A stretch of DNA of 64,000 nt from the NCBI GenBank assembly GCA_001179505.1, contig CDMY01000305.1, positions 434,001 to 498,000 of the forward strand, written 5' to 3'. This DNA comes from Vitrella brassicaformis CCMP3155 (lineage: Eukaryota > Protista > Chromerida). The notes beneath the pieces are model-generated. The model did not search any database, was not told where the DNA came from, and saw only the letters and a program-made list of their open reading frames with translations. A program made the translations under genes and the position numbers. Within the stretch, counting starts at the first letter, position 1; every line of letters begins with the position of its first letter. Shown in pieces: positions 1 through 6,819 of this stretch.

Positions 1-3000
1 CATGGGGCGAGGCTGGACCGACTGACAGTGCAGGAGCGGCTGGACGACACGCGGGAGCAGCGTGTGCTGGAGAGGTTCAAGCGGGCGAATGCCGATTGGC
101 AGGGGCTGAGGGAACGGCTGGCGCAGAGGTCAGGGAGTGGGTGTTGTGTGTTGTATGAGTGGATGAGATGATTGAGCTGGATGAGCATCGATTGGACTGT
201 CTGTTGCCTCATTTCATGGACATGCAGGCTGAATGTTGGCATCGAGGACTTGGCCGTCTCCCGGGCGGAGGAATATCGGGAGAAAATCGAGGTGACAAGA
301 CGGAAACACATGCAGATCAGATCCACTTCACCACTCCTTCTTAGAATCACGACATCATGTCTCTCTCCATCTGTCCACCAGGTGCTCGAGTTGCTGGATG
401 AGTCCATCCCGGTGGCAGACAAAGGTTGGCAGGCGCCGACGACCACAAGAGGCAGGCTTCTATTCGTCGATCTTGATGTCTCTTGTCTGTGGGTGCAGGG
501 GGCTACAGCTGGTTCATGTCGCTGCGCAACAATGACTCACAGCTCATCAACGTGGGCAACCGCTTCTCGGGCCTCACGCTCGAGATCAAGAAGGAGTGGA
601 GCAAAGTCAAGGAGCTCATCAGAAAACCATGGCAAGCACACGTAAACGGTGTGAGACACAGAAGAGGCGTCTCGTTTTCTACAGGTTGACGGAGCTGCAC
701 ACATTGCGCAAGGCGTCCTCCCACCACCCGCCGCCGCTCACGCCCCTCTCCTACACGGCGGCCAAGTGGATTAACTTCGAGAAGACCGGCCGCACCTCGC
801 CAACTGATGCTGCCAGCTCCCACCATGGGATTGCGGGGCCAAAAGTGCAGATCAAGACGTGGAGGGAAAACAGATACCTCGTCGAGCGGTGCGGGCATTA
901 TTCGTGACGACAGATCAGACGGACCCTCCAGAGTCTGCTCGTGTGTGAGTGGATGCGTGCCGTGCAGGCTGGCCAAGTACGGCAGGAGGATGGAGAAGCT
1001 GTCTCCAGCAGCTGTGGCCGTCGATGACCACCTCACAGTAAGACTCTCCATGCACATACAAACATAAACAGACAGACGCACCTCTTTCTCCGCCTCTTCA
1101 CGTCTCAGCTGTATGGAGTGGGTCTGAACCCGATAGCAGAGGAGGGTGTCGGTGAGGGTGTGGGGAGTGAGTACCCGCAGAACGGCGAGGGCAGCCCCAT
1201 GACGCCATCACGCATGTCAAGACACTTCGAGGAAGAAATCGGTAAGCCGGCCGCCATCTCACCGACCGTTGGATCAGTGCTGCTGTGACTGATGTGCACA
1301 GAGCGTGGAGAGATCGCTCTTAAGACCTACAGGTAGGTCGCGGGCACAGCAGCTGTCTGTATGCGCCTGTCTATGGCGTTGTGCAGGCCAGGCGGGACAG
1401 TGCGCGGCAGCCTGAGCCAGCCAGAAGAGCTGGTAAAGGGGCCCAACATCCAGACATTCCCGCAAAAGGTCAGCGAGACACAGAGAGATGCACGCTCATA
1501 CGTGCCATCCATCCATCCATCCATCCATGTGTCTGCAGTTGTTGTTTGACACGCGGATCGGCAAGACGACCACCCAGACTGTTCGCCTGCGCAACACGGG
1601 CACATGTGTGCTCTTCTATGAGTGGATACTTCTCCCACACACGGTAGCTTTCTTCCAGAGCAACCATCCCTTCCCACATACACACACACACACACACAGG
1701 CATCCACCAATTGCACCGCATGAATGTCTGGCTGGCGGTGTCTTTCTCGCTGCTCTTAACGTACAGCGGTCGGTAGAGGTGGCGGATGGTGTGTTGCCAG
1801 CTCCTCCAGTGGAGCCACAGCGCTTCTTCTGTCACCACGTGAGCACCTGGCTTACACACATGAGTACGTCCCATTGCATGCCCTGTGTGTATTGGTTGCA
1901 GCCGAAAGGCTCTCTATTGCCTGGTTGTGACGTGGCGACCTACTTCGCCTTCCGATCAGAGCTGCCGGGCATGTTCCAGGAGACATACGTCCTCCGCACA
2001 AGGTATTGCATACACGCAGCATGATATGATGAATGGATAAGGCTTGTTTCTTTCTCATCCTCTTCAGCCCTGACGTCTTCTCGCCCCCAGACCCGTTGGA
2101 AGTCCGCGCAATCGCACACAAGGTCAGCAAAGTCATGCGTCAGTGAATGTATGACGATATGTGCGCATGTGTGTGTAGGCGGATGCCTTCGCGTCGGATC
2201 GCGAGGAGCTGGATCGTCGCGTGGCCCAACAGCAGCGCGTGCATGGTGTGGAGGAGGTGCTGGAGGACGTCCTCAGGCAGGCCAAGACACCGCCACCACC
2301 GCCACCAGACATGACGGATCGCACGTCAGCCCAGCCCTGTGCACACACGACACGACAGCACACACAAACATACACCACACCCAGACTTACTTAGCTTCCT
2401 CCCCTCATTGCCCTTGTCAGTGTGCAAGAGCGCGTGTTTGAGGAGAATGCATCTCCGCTGCCCCTGCACTACTCGCCGCCTCGTTATGACCAACTGTCAG
2501 CCATCTATGCCTCGACGGTCGCACAGCAACAGGAGGGGCAGGAGGCGATGATGGAGTGGAACGGGAAGGTTGGGTCGCTGTGGGATATTGTCGCGGAGAT
2601 AGCGGACGGTGAGGCCAAGAGGGCGTGCGAGGCTGCAGTCATGGACTCGCTCATTCAGGTGAGTCAGCGGGTCAACACACACGGCTGCCTCAGTTGGCGT
2701 GACCGACTTGTGATGCACATGATTTGCCCACTCAGTCGCTCAGTCGGCCATCCATGAAGGGTGCCTTCGCTGCGGAGCTGCCGGCTCTGCTGCAGGAGTG
2801 CATAGAGGACATACCGGCCACCATCAACGCCAAGAGGGAGGCGTTGGGTCTTGACGTGCTGCCCTTTATCGGCCCGCCACCAGATGAGCACGCAGACGAA
2901 GCCACACAACAGGAATACCAGGCACGCAATGTCAATCAAACACACCAACACAGACGCGATGACACAGACACGTGCATCTGCACATCAATCAGGACGCCCT

Positions 3001-5832
3001 CAATCGTTTTCTGGAGCTGCGCACACAGCAGCCGCCCACCACCGACAAGAAGAAGAAAGACACCAAAGACAAGAAAAAGGCAGAGGCAGTCGATGAGGCA
3101 CAGGACACCCAGTGGCTCACAGAGACCGTCGAAGCCACACTCGAGAGCATCAGCGAGGCGCTGGAGCAAGCTGACAATCGCTCCCGTATCCGTGCCTTTG
3201 AGCAGTCTTTGTCTCAGCACCGGCACGATCTCACTGATCGACTCAAGGTAAGCAAGCAGATACTTACAGAGCCTCACACACGTCTGAATCTCTCTGTCAT
3301 TTCAGCACTATCGTTGTCGGCTGTCGATTGACTCACCTGCATTGTCACTGCCCGGCAGTGTGGTGATGCTGCTGGTGGACCTCTCAGTGCCCTTCACCCA
3401 CACACAAGAGGCTGCGCAGTTCTTTGCTGCCAAGAAGGAGGGGAGGAGGGGCAAAGCAGAAGAGGAGAAAGACGTCGAGGCAGTGCTGGACGAAATCTCC
3501 GTCGAGTGAGCCGCCAGTGCCCATCCAGAAAAATAGCACATATGTGTCTCGTGTTGCAGCATCCTGAAGCGGCGACTGGCCATCCTTCCTGAGATGCTGG
3601 AGCAGGGCGTCCAGGCCGTCATCGTGGCAGCCCACCTGGGCCCCCCTCCCTCATTCACCCCCTCTACAAGCAACACAGACGACACAGAGGCGGCAGAGGG
3701 AGAGCACGATACAGAAGAGGAGGGCACCAAGCGAGATTGGTGGATGACCGGCGAGCGGCCTGTCAGCCCTGCGGGTGGCGACAGTGGTGTGTGGTCTCTC
3801 AAGCCATTCCTGGGTCTGGTGCAGGATGCGGTGGAGGGCAGCGCGGCGGTGTGTGAGTTTATCGAACACACCGAGTGGATGAGCGACGCGAACTACGCCG
3901 ACACACTGAGGTGAGTCACGGGTGGCATGCTACTACACAACAAACGGCAAAGCCACACATTTCTGCCTGTGTGTACTGACAGAGAGGAGCCGGAGGGCCG
4001 CGTGTATCTGCTCGAGAACCTGACCCACATCTACGAGCAGCACCCCCACTGGCAGAGCTCATCACCCGCACACTGCCGCCAGATCCCACTCGCGTACCGC
4101 CAGGCCTTCGGCCGCCACCTAGCCGCCCAGCTGCGGCCAGACTGCATAATCAACGACGACCTCTCCACCGCACACCAGTGCCTCACCGCCTCATGTCTCA
4201 CATGGGAGCCTTTCCACCATTTTCCTTTGCGTGTGATCGGCCCCTCTGTGAGGAGTGAGGTTGTGTCTATCGGAGAGATGGTGCTGGGCAACGTGCATCG
4301 GTGGCGTGAGAGGGAGGAGCCGCCGCCGCCCACTTGCCGAGTGGATTACCTCAGGCGATTTCTGCAGAGAGATGTTGGCGAGGTTGGCGAGCGAGTCCAG
4401 GAGGTATGTACATGAGCGTGTTCTGCGGCGGCCGGATCAGGTGTCGTGTGTGGACCCGTGTGTGCAGGTGATAGACGAGAATCAGGTGCGGAGGGAGAAA
4501 GAGATGGCGCACCAGTGTCTCCCGTTCCTCACCATCATCTCTGGACAACCAGACGCCAGCAGCCAGGAATCTTCCGCCACACACCTGGTGGGGCAGCTCA
4601 GGTCACTGCGGGACGCCCTCGACTTCTCGACGGCGATCTTCCTCTGCGGTGACATCGCCAAATGTGTGGCCCAACACGCATATGCTGTCGACTGGCCGTC
4701 AGCAGCACACGCAGACGCCAGCGAGGAAGACGCAGAGAAGGAAGACATCATCAAAAGGGCGGTTGTGGACCTCGCTCGGATGGCTGTCGATCGCAATGTG
4801 GAGCTCACCTTGCCGCAGGACGTCTCCTGCGAGTACACCGGCAAAGGGGAAGAAGGGGAAGGGGAGGAGTCGGCAGCTGAAGAGGACAAGGGCGAGCCCG
4901 CCGCTGAAGTGCCTGCCTACAAGGTTGGTGAAGTGCGCACATTTGCCGTCCCGCCACACTCACTGGAGGCCTCATCCGTACCAAGTGGCGAGGAGCAGCA
5001 AGCTGACGTCTTCGCGCTTGACGAAGACGCTGCTGCCCCCGCTGATGTCGAACAGCCACAGCAGGAGCAAGACAACACAGCTGAAGACAACAATCATGAA
5101 GAAGGGGAGACACAGCGGGAGGCACAAGAAGCCGCGCCGCCCTCTCTGCATCCCGTTGTTCCCGCACGTGATGAGTGGGTGTTCCGAGATGTGGGTCCGC
5201 TGACCGTGCAGATGCTGGCTGCCAAGATGCGCAAGTGCAGGGGAGTCATGTGGATGGGCGGGGGCCTCGGGGCGGACGACAAAGCCACCAAGAAGCTGAT
5301 ACGCTACATGGAGCAGCTCACTCACCCGTAAGCACATCTCCCTTTTCGTGGAGGTGGAGACACGGTCGTTTATCTCTATCTGTGTGTCGCTGCGTATTCG
5401 TTGTGCAGCGAGGAGGAGTTTGAGCTGTCTGAGGATGAAGAGGAGGAGGCCGAGGAAGAAGAGGCCGAAGAAGAACAGGAAGCGGAAGAAGAGAAAGAGG
5501 AAGGCGAGGAACAGGGCGAGGGCGAGGAAGACAGGCAACAGGATGCTCAACAAGTAAGCCACCCGCATATATCTATAGAGACACACCATCATCCTGCCAC
5601 TCTTCAGGCCGCCACGCAGGAGACAGGTGCGGCCCCCGCACAGCCAGAGGAGCCCGACGTGGACCTGCAGCTCTCGTGTGTCATCGGCAAATCCATCCTG
5701 GCCCATGCGGTCCGCTTCCTCCGCCGCAGCGACGGGCTGACAGTCATGTCGGCTGCAGCAGAGGGGAATCTTTTCGGGGCGCCAGCCGGAGAGTGGCTGC
5801 CCGCGTTTGTGGCCATGGATGGGAGACAGTAG
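1..5832 (+). CDS. MYCBPAP: MYCBP-associated protein (MYCBPAP/FAP147-like) fused in frame to a C-terminal degenerate phosphoglycerate kinase domain; multi-exon, 5' end outside window
   Basis: Spliced exons give EQRVLERFKRANADW, SRAEEYREKIE, LFDTRIGKTTTQTVRLRNTGTCVLFYEW, PKGSLLPG..FAFRSELPGMFQETYVLRT and MEWNGKVGSLWD, which match my recollection of the MYCBPAP Ig-like domain and helical region. Downstream exons give PGK-like motifs in the correct order (see next feature). Stop TAG at 5830-5832. Confidence 0.8.
3307..5832 (+). other. Pseudo-phosphoglycerate kinase domain inside the MYCBPAP gene
   Basis: Collinear motifs, with canonical PGK in brackets: SIDSPALSLPGSVVMLLVDLSVP (GKRVLxRVDFNVP); KRRLAILPEMLEQGVQAVIVAAHLGPP (RI..LxxG.K.VIL.SHLGRP); SLKP; GRVYLLENLTH (LLENLRF); DCIINDDLSTAHQ (DVYVNDAFGTAHR); FLTIISGQP (FLAILGGAK); AIFLCGDIA (IIGGGMA); VELTLPQDV (LPVDF); RDVGPLT (LDIGPxT); VMWMGG (IVWNGP); GEWLPAFVAM (GKxLPGVxAL). 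Confidence 0.85.
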
Positions 5833-5960
5833 TGTGTCTGTGTGAGTATGTGTGTCTCAGTGCGTGACTGTCTTTTCATTCAATAGCACCGTGGGCTAAA
5901 GCTCCCCGCATGCATCGCTTCCAAGAAGAAGAAGGCCAAGAACAAGGTCCGTTCATGCCG

Positions 5961-6819
5961 TCATGGGAGCATACTGTAAAAGCCGTGCCACAGACGGGAG
6001 TCGTCGTGGCGCTTCATCCACTCCTTGTGGCCTGGACACACACACACATCCGTACCGAATCCAACCCTAGGTTCGTTGTCATAAAAGGAACCTGGGAAAA
6101 GCGTGCAAGTGTAGAGTCCAGAGAGTGCGTAGTGGGCCAAGGAGTACCCGCAGCTATGGTTTTGTCTATCACTCGAGTGTAGGGAGCGACGCAGAATGTC
6201 CCCTCGCCCGACGTAGGGAGGAAAGACAGAAGTCCCGATCTCGTCGCCTGCGCGTTCATCTGCTGTGTCCCACAGTAGTTGCCTCTCTTGTTGCGCTCGA
6301 GCCCCTTCTGATAGTCCTCTGCCGTTCCAGGTTGCGATACACACGTTCCTTGGCCAACCTGCACGTGGGAACACGTATGCAGGCATTTTTTGACCACGGG
6401 CATCAGGACTTACCGGTTGGTCGCTGTTGTCGATAACGGTAACGACACAAACATCTCCGTCGGCCGCGCAGACATCCATGGAGCTGGCGCCCATGTGTGA
6501 GACGACAACTCCGCCGGCAGCTGCGTATTTCTCCTCATCGCCTGCCCCACCCTCCGTCTCCTGAGTCTCCTGAGGCTCTTCTCCAGTGGCCTCCTCTCTG
6601 AGTTCCTCGGCGAACCACACACGACAGGGCTGGCCGGGCTGCATCATCATGTTGCGGCCGGCGTCTGCAGACAGACCGACCGCCATCCCTGCATCAACTA
6701 TTCCAAAAAGCGCAGCAACCGTACGTAATATGCATACCATTGTTGTCGACCGACTGAGTCACGTGATGGGCGGCCGAAAGGGACAGCACGAGCAGCGGTA
6801 GCAAGAGGAAAGCCCTCAT
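5961..6819 (-). CDS. Hypothetical secreted protein with signal peptide and several Cys
   Basis: ATG at 6819 gives MRAFLLLPLLVLSLSAAHH. GT-AG introns in compatible phases join it to GMAVGLSADAGRN.. and VGQGTCVSQPGTAEDYQKG..GNYCG. The 3' exon structure is uncertain. Confidence 0.55.

What the first reader, a model, noticed from the sequence alone, without database searches (positions are those of the whole stretch)
1..5832. Axonemal MYCBPAP fused to a catalytically dead phosphoglycerate kinase domain
Seen in sequence: the MYCBPAP-like exons run in phase (..DRLK|HYRCRLSID.., phase 0 to phase 0 across intron 3248-3306) into a complete, collinear PGK fold. Most catalytic or substrate residues are replaced: DFN to DLS, HLGRP to HLGPP, ENLRF to ENLTH, TAHR to TAHQ, GGAK to SGQP, NGP.GVFE to MGGGLGAD. 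The terminal GGG motifs are also lost. Established knowledge: MYCBPAP/FAP147 is a central-pair (C2a) projection protein, and other central-pair projections carry metabolic-enzyme folds (enolase and an adenylate-kinase-like domain in C1b). Inference: a glycolytic enzyme fold has been recruited as a structural or nucleotide/metabolite-sensing module of the flagellar central apparatus. I do not know of this fusion being described, but could not search for it.
Basis: partly seen in the sequence, partly recalled or inferred. Interest (0 to 1): 0.8.

Follow-up and report, generated by a model that had tools for sequence, protein, structure and literature searches.

The report
Known MYCBPAP–dead-PGK fusion, Vitrella copy
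This is a real single gene of the alga Vitrella brassicaformis that joins a flagellar central-pair protein (MYCBPAP/FAP147) to a degenerate, almost certainly inactive phosphoglycerate-kinase domain, but the same fusion already exists in public databases for oomycetes and has been noted in print for Tetrahymena.

Summary
Window 1-5832 (+) holds 23 exons that reproduce residues 114-1528 of one annotated 1528-aa protein. That protein lies on assembly GCA_001179505.1, Vitrella brassicaformis CCMP3155. One contig joins the upstream exon to the first two PGK-like exons.

On the full protein, Pfam gives MYCBPAP at 115 bits and PGK at 30.6 bits (cut-off 27). A forced full-length alignment of the 733-aa tail to a PGK profile scores z = 8.9 against 2000 shuffles. 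A 95%-identical relative keeps all covered splice sites and gives dN/dS 0.43.

The fusion is not new. Searches found 15 other MYCBPAP+PGK proteins of 1600-2270 aa. They include many Phytophthora and Pythium entries that UniRef names "phosphoglycerate kinase". A 2020 review describes a Tetrahymena "MYCBPAP-PGK". The PGK motifs are degenerate in the nine other family members examined.

What remains little explored is the reading as a pseudoenzyme module of the C2a central-pair projection, possibly a relic of flagellar glycolysis. Verdict: new member of a known kind, moderate interest.

The parts
1..5832 (+). 3' 93% of one protein-coding gene. It has 23 exons in the window and the stop codon at 5830-5832. 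The product is P0002, 1528 aa. The first 113 codons lie upstream of the window.
   Evidence: The spliced translation is identical to P0002 residues 114-1528. Eleven introns are RNA-confirmed. The gene is 3001-9258 of L083 on CDMY01000305.1.
52..2511 (+). MYCBPAP / FAP147 family domain (P0002 aa 131-599), spread over exons 1-15. It includes the ASH/Ig-like part in exons 1539-1643, 1767-1838 and 1902-2002.
   Evidence: Pfam PF14646 scores 115.4 bits, E 4.2e-33. PDB chain 9ijj_v 'MYCBP-associated protein' matches at E 7.5e-14, aa 402-589 against 411-590. Language-model neighbours are HYDIN/CFAP65-type Ig clusters.
632..684 (+). GC-AG intron (donor GCAAGC), phase 2. This is the junction I could not solve with GT donors.
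   Evidence: Sequence. It is required for the translation to equal P0002. No RNA contig covers it.
2512..3247 (+). Linker between the two domains (aa 600-795), with no Pfam family and a Lys-rich stretch. It contains the one intron (2922 or 2931 to 2992) that lies in the only RNA gap between the domains, roughly 2834-3034.
   Evidence: The coverage table shows bin 2801-3000 almost empty.
3248..3305 (+).
   Evidence: X1 joint 3245->3304 (cut +2), with 82 nt on the shorter side, on the same contig as 3306-3505 and 3560-3910. The splice sites are conserved in relative L002.
3306..4403 (+). PGK-like N lobe (aa 796-1119; exons 3306-3505, 3560-3910, 3983-4403). It carries the motifs VDLSVP, AHLGPPP, LLENLTH and NDDLSTAHQ, plus three large inserts.
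   Evidence: The best Pfam PGK stretch is aa 866-1079 against model positions 35-177. The N-lobe permutation test gives z 9.1. AF2 model residues 9-208 superpose on PGK residues 6-150 at Z 7.0, rmsd about 3.5 A, about 115 residues. dN/dS is 0.25.
4404..4467 (+). Inferred GT-AG intron (GTATGT...GTGCAG) that shifts the frame between the two PGK-like lobes.
   Evidence: It is the only canonical short intron that keeps the ORF open. It is used in the public model. Its splice sites are kept in L002. No RNA contig covers it.
4468..5832 (+). PGK-like C lobe (aa 1120-1528; exons 4468-5327, 5409-5553, 5608-5832). It carries the motifs PFLTIISGQPD, FLCGDIAKC, LTLPQDV, RDVGP, WMGGGLGAD, CVIGKS and MSAAAEG. 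It has a long acidic insert in 4468-5327, and exon 5409-5553 is poly-Glu.
   Evidence: Pfam PGK scores 16.6 bits at model positions 277-313. All ten best named language-model neighbours are PGK clusters, at score 0.85. The C-lobe permutation test gives z 4.0. Introns 5328-5408 and 5554-5607 are confirmed in two RNA runs.

Best explanation
Shown. Window 1-5832 encodes most of a single 1528-aa protein of Vitrella brassicaformis. Its N-terminal 600 residues are a MYCBPAP/FAP147 domain. Its last 733 residues are a two-lobed domain derived from phosphoglycerate kinase. That domain is interrupted by long, partly acidic inserts and has lost nearly all residues PGK uses for catalysis and substrate binding. 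The tail is under purifying selection. The protein belongs to a family with the same architecture that is also found in oomycetes and, according to the literature, in Tetrahymena.

Inferred. MYCBPAP/FAP147 forms the stalk of the C2a projection of the ciliary central apparatus. The PGK-derived tail is therefore most likely a pseudoenzyme module carried on that projection in the zoospore flagellum. It would serve as a structural or docking body. Less likely, it is a ligand-binding sensor. It would be a relic of a once-active PGK tethered to the central pair, analogous to enolase on C1b. It probably does not catalyse the PGK reaction.
For: - One gene: the exon model equals P0002. The spliced RNA contig across 3248-3305 and ten other joints support it. 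The ORF is open over 1528 codons.
- Species: GCA_001179505.1 is Vitrella brassicaformis CCMP3155 (PMC5028923).
- Domains: MYCBPAP 115 bits, PGK 30.6 and 34.2 bits against a cut-off of 27.
- Collinearity: z 8.9 against shuffles.
- hhalign end to end: 382 columns, 26% identity, P 0.0066.
- Family tails against a PGK profile: probability 97.6%, E 3.8e-12.
- Family profile against the PDB: every match below E 0.001 is a PGK, down to E 1e-14.
- Fold: the N lobe of the model matches PGK at Z 7.0.
- Degeneracy: a real PGK scores 471.6 bits on the same Pfam model. The motif table shows the losses.
- Constraint: exons are 96.3% identical to the relative and introns 91.2%. All eight covered splice sites are kept. 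The only exon indel is 21 nt. dN/dS is 0.43, binomial P 0.0006.
- Family: 15 further proteins carry the Pfam pair MYCBPAP+PGK.
- C2a role of FAP147/MYCBPAP: papers read.
- Ciliary context of Tetrahymena MYCBPAP-PGK.
Against: - No localisation, binding or activity data exist for this protein or any family member.
- The structure prediction is poor (mean pLDDT 42). The C lobe is not confirmed structurally. Z 7 is within the range the tool calls 'common arrangement'.
- The Vitrella tail is barely similar to the oomycete tails: best domain i-E-value 7e-5, negative score for the whole sequence. Orthology of the tails therefore rests mainly on architecture and on the MYCBPAP part.
- RNA evidence is low-depth contigs. 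It leaves about 200 nt (about 2834-3034) between the two domains unbridged, and 4200-4596 uncovered.
- dN/dS of 0.43 indicates fairly relaxed constraint.
- Asp23, His62, possibly Arg38 and a Glu343-to-Asp change remain, so residual ligand binding is not excluded.
Confidence: 0.7

Rival explanations
1. The tail is a ligand-binding sensor. The dead PGK fold would still bind a nucleotide or 3-phosphoglycerate and pass metabolic state to the central pair.
For: - Asp23 and His62 equivalents are kept, possibly Arg38 as well, and Glu343 is changed only to Asp.
- Oomycete members keep GGK...K and NG..G.VE in the nucleotide lobe.
- Other central-pair projections cluster nucleotide-handling domains.
Against: - In Vitrella the basic patch for 3-PG is gone (Arg65, Arg122, Arg170).
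- The nucleotide-lobe residues Lys215, Lys219, Asn336 and Asp374 and both GGG loops are also gone.
- The lobe that keeps its motifs differs between lineages, which argues against one conserved ligand.
Confidence: 0.15
2. The tail is an active, highly divergent PGK that makes ATP locally in the flagellum.
For: - Glycolytic enzymes are known in flagella, and enolase sits on C1b.
- UniRef names the oomycete homologues 'phosphoglycerate kinase'.
Against: - The tail scores 34 bits against 472 bits for a real PGK.
- The catalytic Lys215 position is Pro.
- Arg65, Arg122, Arg170, Asn336, Asp374 and the hinge GGG motifs are all replaced.
- Large inserts sit inside both lobes.
Confidence: 0.04
3. The tail is a neutral relic that is decaying without function.
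For: - dN/dS is rather high (0.43 overall, 0.55 in the C lobe).
- The inserts are low-complexity.
- The tail diverges very fast between lineages.
Against: - Nonsynonymous changes are significantly depleted (P 0.0006).
- The reading frame and all covered splice sites are kept in the relative, and the only exon indel is in frame.
- The tail persists in chromerid, oomycete and, by the literature, ciliate lineages at 700-900 aa length.
Confidence: 0.08
4. The fusion is a gene-model artefact: two neighbouring genes (MYCBPAP and a PGK-like gene) have been merged.
For: No RNA contig bridges about 2834-3034.
Against: - The ORF stays open in frame across that gap.
- A contig joins exon 2993-3247 to the PGK-like exons.
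- 15 independently predicted proteins from other organisms have the same two domains in the same order.
Confidence: 0.03

Closest known systems
MYCBPAP-PGK fusion proteins of oomycetes (for example Phytophthora cactorum PC123_g12658, P. ramorum KRP22_007228, Pythium brassicae PybrP1_000297; P0009-P0019) and Tetrahymena thermophila TTHERM_00856750
   Same: - The architecture is the same: MYCBPAP at about residues 130-650, a long linker, and a C-terminal PGK-derived domain of 700-900 aa with inserts.
- The PGK Pfam score is low (35-73 bits).
- The catalytic motifs are degenerate in all members examined.
   Different: - The Vitrella tail is the most divergent (30.6 bits).
- Vitrella keeps N-lobe motifs (DLSVP, HLG, LENL, TAH) that oomycetes lost. 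It has lost C-lobe motifs (GGK..K, NG..G.VE) that they keep.
- Tail-to-tail similarity is marginal.
- The Tetrahymena sequence could not be fetched, so that link rests on PMC7729029 only.
FAP147 (Chlamydomonas) / MYCBPAP (mammals), stalk of the C2a central-pair projection
   Same: There is a full-length match to PF14646 and to the ASH/Ig part of the solved 932-aa MYCBPAP chain 9ijj_v.
   Different: These proteins are about 930-950 aa (97 kDa) and are annotated with MYCBPAP and ASH domains only. The family-tail profile finds no match in the solved MYCBPAP chain. They therefore appear to lack the PGK tail.
Trypanosoma brucei PGKL (Tb927.11.2380), an axonemal catalytically dead PGK (Brown et al. 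2014, PMC4106842)
   Same: Both are PGK-derived domains without key catalytic residues, built into a large flagellar protein. PGKL was interpreted as a relic of flagellar glycolysis.
   Different: PGKL has the order PGK, then a cNMP-binding domain, then HTH, with PGK at the N-terminus and no MYCBPAP domain. No cNMP or HTH domain is found here. The paper does not mention MYCBPAP fusions. The two are probably independent recruitments.
Canonical phosphoglycerate kinase (PF00162; for example E. coli Pgk, human PGK1)
   Same: The two lobes are in the same order and all conserved motifs are collinear. 102 of 385 aligned positions are identical to E. coli PGK.
   Different: The domain is 733 aa against about 390-415 aa, because of inserts. 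It scores 34 bits against 472. The catalytic and binding residues are replaced.

Membership tests
MYCBPAP family (Pfam PF14646; FAP147 orthologues) | Match to the family model above its curated cut-off, over most of the model | tested here: met
   115.4 bits against a cut-off of 24.5, model positions 2-437 of 439, P0002 aa 131-599. Three separate exons match collinearly.
MYCBPAP family (Pfam PF14646; FAP147 orthologues) | ASH/Ig-like domain homologous to that of a solved MYCBPAP | tested here: met
   PDB 9ijj_v, E 7.5e-14, aa 402-589 against 411-590.
MYCBPAP family (Pfam PF14646; FAP147 orthologues) | Location in the C2a projection and binding to FAP65/CCDC108 and FAP70 | not testable with these tools
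   Known for Chlamydomonas and mouse only (papers read).
Phosphoglycerate kinase fold (Pfam PF00162) | Match above the curated cut-off | tested here: met
   30.6 bits on the full protein and 34.2 bits on the tail, against a cut-off of 27.
Phosphoglycerate kinase fold (Pfam PF00162) | Both lobes present and collinear | tested here: met
   Forced full-length alignment gives z 8.9; the N lobe gives 9.1 and the C lobe 4.0. hhalign covers PGK positions 3-385 of 387.
Phosphoglycerate kinase fold (Pfam PF00162) | Three-dimensional PGK fold | tested here: inconclusive
   AF2 mean pLDDT is 42. The N lobe matches PGK residues 6-150 at Z 7.0. The best Foldseek hits are PGK but only at E 0.09. The C lobe is not modelled.
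Active phosphoglycerate kinase (enzyme) | Catalytic and substrate residues by human PGK1 numbering (from my knowledge of PGK structures): Arg38, Arg65, Arg122, Arg170, Lys215, Lys219, Asn336, Glu343, Asp374 and the two GGG loops | tested here: not met
   HLGRP is HLGPP, ENLRF is ENLTH, TAHR is TAHQ, GGAK is SGQP, WNGP.GVFE is WMGGGLGAD, GGGD is VIGK, and STGGGA is SAAAEG. Only Asp23 and His62 are kept, possibly Arg38; Glu343 is changed to Asp.
MYCBPAP-PGK fusion family (oomycetes, Tetrahymena) | MYCBPAP domain N-terminal and PGK-derived domain C-terminal in one polypeptide of about 1500-2300 aa | tested here: met
   P0002 compared with P0006-P0021.
MYCBPAP-PGK fusion family (oomycetes, Tetrahymena) | Sequence relatedness to other members in both parts | tested here: inconclusive
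   For the MYCBPAP part, BLASTP gives E 1e-18 to P0006. For the tail, only one HSP at E 0.005 and HMM domains at i-E-values 7e-5 and 6e-3 are found.
Trypanosomatid PGKL | PGK-like domain followed by cyclic-nucleotide-binding and HTH domains | tested here: not met
   No such Pfam domains are found in P0002 at E up to 1.

The most novel reading that the evidence does not exclude
A PGK was tethered to the C2a stalk protein in an early ancestor of alveolates and stramenopiles, as part of a lower-glycolysis set on the central apparatus (enolase sits on C1b). It then became a pseudoenzyme that is retained as an integral, perhaps ligand-sensing, body of the C2a projection. Under this reading, SAR C2a projections contain a PGK-shaped density that Chlamydomonas and animals lack.
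Probability: 0.25. Interest if true: 0.6.

Novelty: new member of a known kind. Interest (0 to 1): 0.38.

Why it matters
The finding gives a chromerid example of a little-noticed family in which the C2a central-pair stalk protein carries a degenerate glycolytic-enzyme fold. The only printed discussion (for Tetrahymena) read it as a Myc-related moonlighting PGK.

Two links appear not to have been made in the literature I could search. First, the family is tied to FAP147/C2a. Second, the PGK motifs are degenerate in all ten members examined here, including Vitrella. Both bear on the old idea that ancestral flagella carried part of glycolysis.

The finding also warns that the UniRef name 'phosphoglycerate kinase' on these 1700-1900-aa oomycete proteins is probably a misannotation of function.

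Tried and rejected
- Pfam on single exons: only 16.6 bits for PGK, and nothing for the N-lobe exons.
- phmmer of exon pieces against the PDB: no hit.
- phmmer of E. coli PGK against my spliced tail: 2.4 bits.
- A narrow gammaproteobacterial PGK HMM in local mode: 4.7 bits, barely above the best shuffle. Local scoring fails because of the inserts, so I wrote a forced full-length (glocal) alignment with cheap long insertions and a shuffle test.
- The whole-library phmmer search with exon 4468-5325: one hit only, the 93%-identical fragment P0001. Its cluster listing then gave the full-length protein P0002.
- AF2 of that exon alone: pLDDT 36, unusable.
- Language-model search with the N-lobe exon: no PGK signal.
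- Long ORFs elsewhere in the window: no Pfam family, so they could not be used to name the organism.
- The scan's earlier notes held nothing relevant.
- The genome-contig scan returned only 72-97% identical gammaproteobacterial PGKs. My PGK profile is therefore narrow.
- I could not fetch the Tetrahymena, Chromera, apicomplexan or dinoflagellate orthologues.
- My GT-only splice search could not solve the junction near 632-685. The public model uses a GC-AG intron there.
Full report
**Gene structure**

Six-frame reading of 1-6200 showed coding segments changing frame every 50-900 bases on the + strand, as expected for a eukaryotic gene with short introns. Public runs were laid on window 1-6000. 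Two runs (X1, X2) give contigs that skip 11 short stretches with GT..AG ends. Two DNA runs (X3, X4) are collinear with the window.

The RNA-confirmed introns are:
- 889-967
- 1839-1901
- 2003-2067
- 2123-2178
- 2325-2420
- 2659-2735
- 3248-3305
- 3506-3559
- 3911-3982
- 5328-5408
- 5554-5607

One 639-nt contig carries 3164-3245, 3306-3505 and 3560-3910 in a row. The last 'MYCBPAP-side' exon and the first two PGK-like exons thus lie on one RNA.

I inferred the remaining introns from frame and splice signals. A cluster look-up of the only database hit then returned the annotated full-length protein of this gene, P0002, 1528 aa. A 23-exon model in the window translates exactly to P0002 residues 114-1528. 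It includes a GC-AG intron at 632-684 that I had missed.

The gene lies on CDMY01000305.1 of GCA_001179505.1. A paper lists that assembly as Vitrella brassicaformis CCMP3155. The window cuts off the first 426 nt of the gene.

Two limits apply to the RNA evidence. It consists of low-depth contigs. No contig bridges about 2834-3034 or 4200-4596.

**The two domains**

On P0002, Pfam gives MYCBPAP at 115.4 bits (E 4e-33, aa 131-599, nearly the whole model). It gives PGK at 30.6 bits (E 2.4e-7, cut-off 27), with the best stretch at aa 866-1079 against model positions 35-177. The tail alone (aa 796-1528) scores 34.2 bits. E. coli PGK scores 471.6 bits on the same model. The solved MYCBPAP chain 9ijj_v matches aa 402-589 at E 7.5e-14.

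**Is the PGK likeness more than chance?**

Exon by exon the signal is weak, because 350 of the 733 tail residues are inserts. I therefore aligned all 387 columns of a PGK profile (27 gammaproteobacterial sequences) to the tail, with cheap long insertions.
- The score is 128.5.
- 1000 residue shuffles give 1.5 +/- 14.2 (maximum 72).
- 1000 block-order shuffles give 3.9 +/- 15.8.
- The reversed tail gives -3, and the upstream 562 residues give -42.
- Taken apart, the N lobe gives z 9.1 and the C lobe z 4.0.
- 102 of 385 aligned positions are identical to E. coli PGK.

Further lines agree:
- hhalign aligns the tail end to end with PGK positions 3-385 (26% identity, P 0.0066).
- Language-model neighbours of the C-lobe exon are all PGK clusters, at score 0.85 (a lead only).
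- A structure prediction with 16 family sequences is poor (pLDDT 42). Its better part, residues 9-208, superposes on PGK residues 6-150 (Z 7.0, rmsd about 3.5 A, about 115 residues, 21-23% identity). PGKs fill the first 28 rows. Foldseek also ranks PGKs first, but only at E 0.09.

I take the PGK origin as established by sequence. The fold is only partly confirmed structurally.

**Catalytic residues**

In the alignments the motif changes are:

| PGK motif | Vitrella tail |
|---|---|
| DFNVP | DLSVP |
| HLGRP | HLGPP |
| ENLRF | ENLTH |
| TAHR | TAHQ |
| GGAKV..K | SGQPD..S |
| WNGP.GVFE | WMGGGLGAD |
| GGGD | VIGK |
| STGGGA | SAAAEG |

By my knowledge of PGK structures, these changes remove Arg65, Arg122, Arg170, Lys215, Lys219, Asn336, Asp374 and both hinge glycine loops. 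Asp23 and His62 remain, perhaps Arg38, and Glu343 becomes Asp. An active PGK is very unlikely. This is inferred, not assayed.

**Constraint**

A 3449-bp metagenome contig (L002) is 95% identical to window 2584-6046.
- Exons are 96.3% identical and introns plus the 3' flank 91.2%.
- All eight covered introns keep GT and AG.
- The only exon indel is 21 nt, in the poly-Glu exon.
- The spliced ORF stays open.
- dN/dS is 0.43 for the tail (N lobe 0.25, C lobe 0.55). Nonsynonymous changes are depleted at P 0.0006.

The tail is therefore maintained, under moderate constraint.

**Relatives and prior knowledge**

With P0002 as query, the word-index searches found P0006 and P0007. From P0006's tail they found 14 more proteins of 1650-2270 aa. 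All but one carry PF14646 plus PF00162 in the precomputed Pfam column. Many are from Phytophthora and Pythium and are named 'phosphoglycerate kinase' or 'MYCBP-associated protein' by UniRef or NCBI.

My own Pfam runs give MYCBPAP 124-221 bits and PGK only 35-73 bits in six of them. An alignment of 16 tails matches a PGK alignment at probability 97.6%, E 3.8e-12. In the PDB, every match of that alignment's profile below E 0.001 is a PGK; it finds no match in the solved MYCBPAP chain. The motif table shows that catalytic motifs are degenerate in all nine other members examined, though different ones survive in different lineages.

In print:
- Rojas-Pirela et al. 2020 list Tetrahymena TTHERM_00856750 as a multidomain 'MYCBPAP-PGK' and speculate about a Myc-type role.
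- A 2025-26 preprint cross-links 'MYCBPAP-PGK' to a ciliary complex.
- Chlamydomonas FAP147 (97 kDa) is annotated with MYCBPAP and ASH domains only.
- Papers on C2a in Chlamydomonas and mouse do not mention PGK.
- The T. brucei dead axonemal PGKL has a different architecture.

**Verdict**

What is little explored is its meaning. Linking the family to the C2a stalk protein suggests a pseudo-PGK body on the central apparatus of alveolates and stramenopiles, perhaps a relic of tethered flagellar glycolysis. That mechanism is inferred from homologues and is untested.

Noticed in passing
window 632-684 (and possibly 2922-2992): This is a GC-AG intron with donor GCAAGC. The public model also uses a GC donor at 2922, where a GT donor at 2931 (conserved in the relative) would add three residues (ARN). 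No RNA contig decides between them.
   Followed up: partly
window 1496-1537 and 1667-1710: (CCAT)n and (CA)n microsatellites lie inside introns 1469-1538 and 1644-1766. The read tool skipped both as repeats, and the DNA contigs of runs X3 and X4 break at the first one.
   Followed up: no
window about 5961-6819, minus strand (L083 9387-10245): A convergent 204-aa gene without a Pfam family ends about 130 nt from the stop codon of the MYCBPAP-PGK gene. RNA depth rises in 5801-6000, probably from that neighbour.
   Followed up: no
L083 189-2783, minus strand (upstream of the window): The divergent upstream neighbour is a 614-aa NUDIX protein with a weak Zn-ribbon_NUD hit (an NADH pyrophosphatase-like architecture).
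   Followed up: no
L002 (ENA metagenome ERZ893784, contig k147_5879470): An environmental contig is 95% identical to Vitrella brassicaformis DNA over 3.4 kb, so a close relative or another strain is present in that sample. Its gene caller split the exons into separate small 'proteins' (P0001, P0003-P0005).
   Followed up: partly
PDB 9io5_O: A 511-aa chain named 'Phosphoglycerate kinase', in a multi-chain entry, matched the family-tail profile weakly (E 0.068). It is longer than a normal PGK. I did not find out what assembly it belongs to.
   Followed up: no
P0006, P0016, P0021 linkers: The linkers between the MYCBPAP and PGK-like domains of some family members give sub-threshold Pfam hits to Nop53 or CDC45. 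These are probably charged low-complexity matches, not domains.
   Followed up: no
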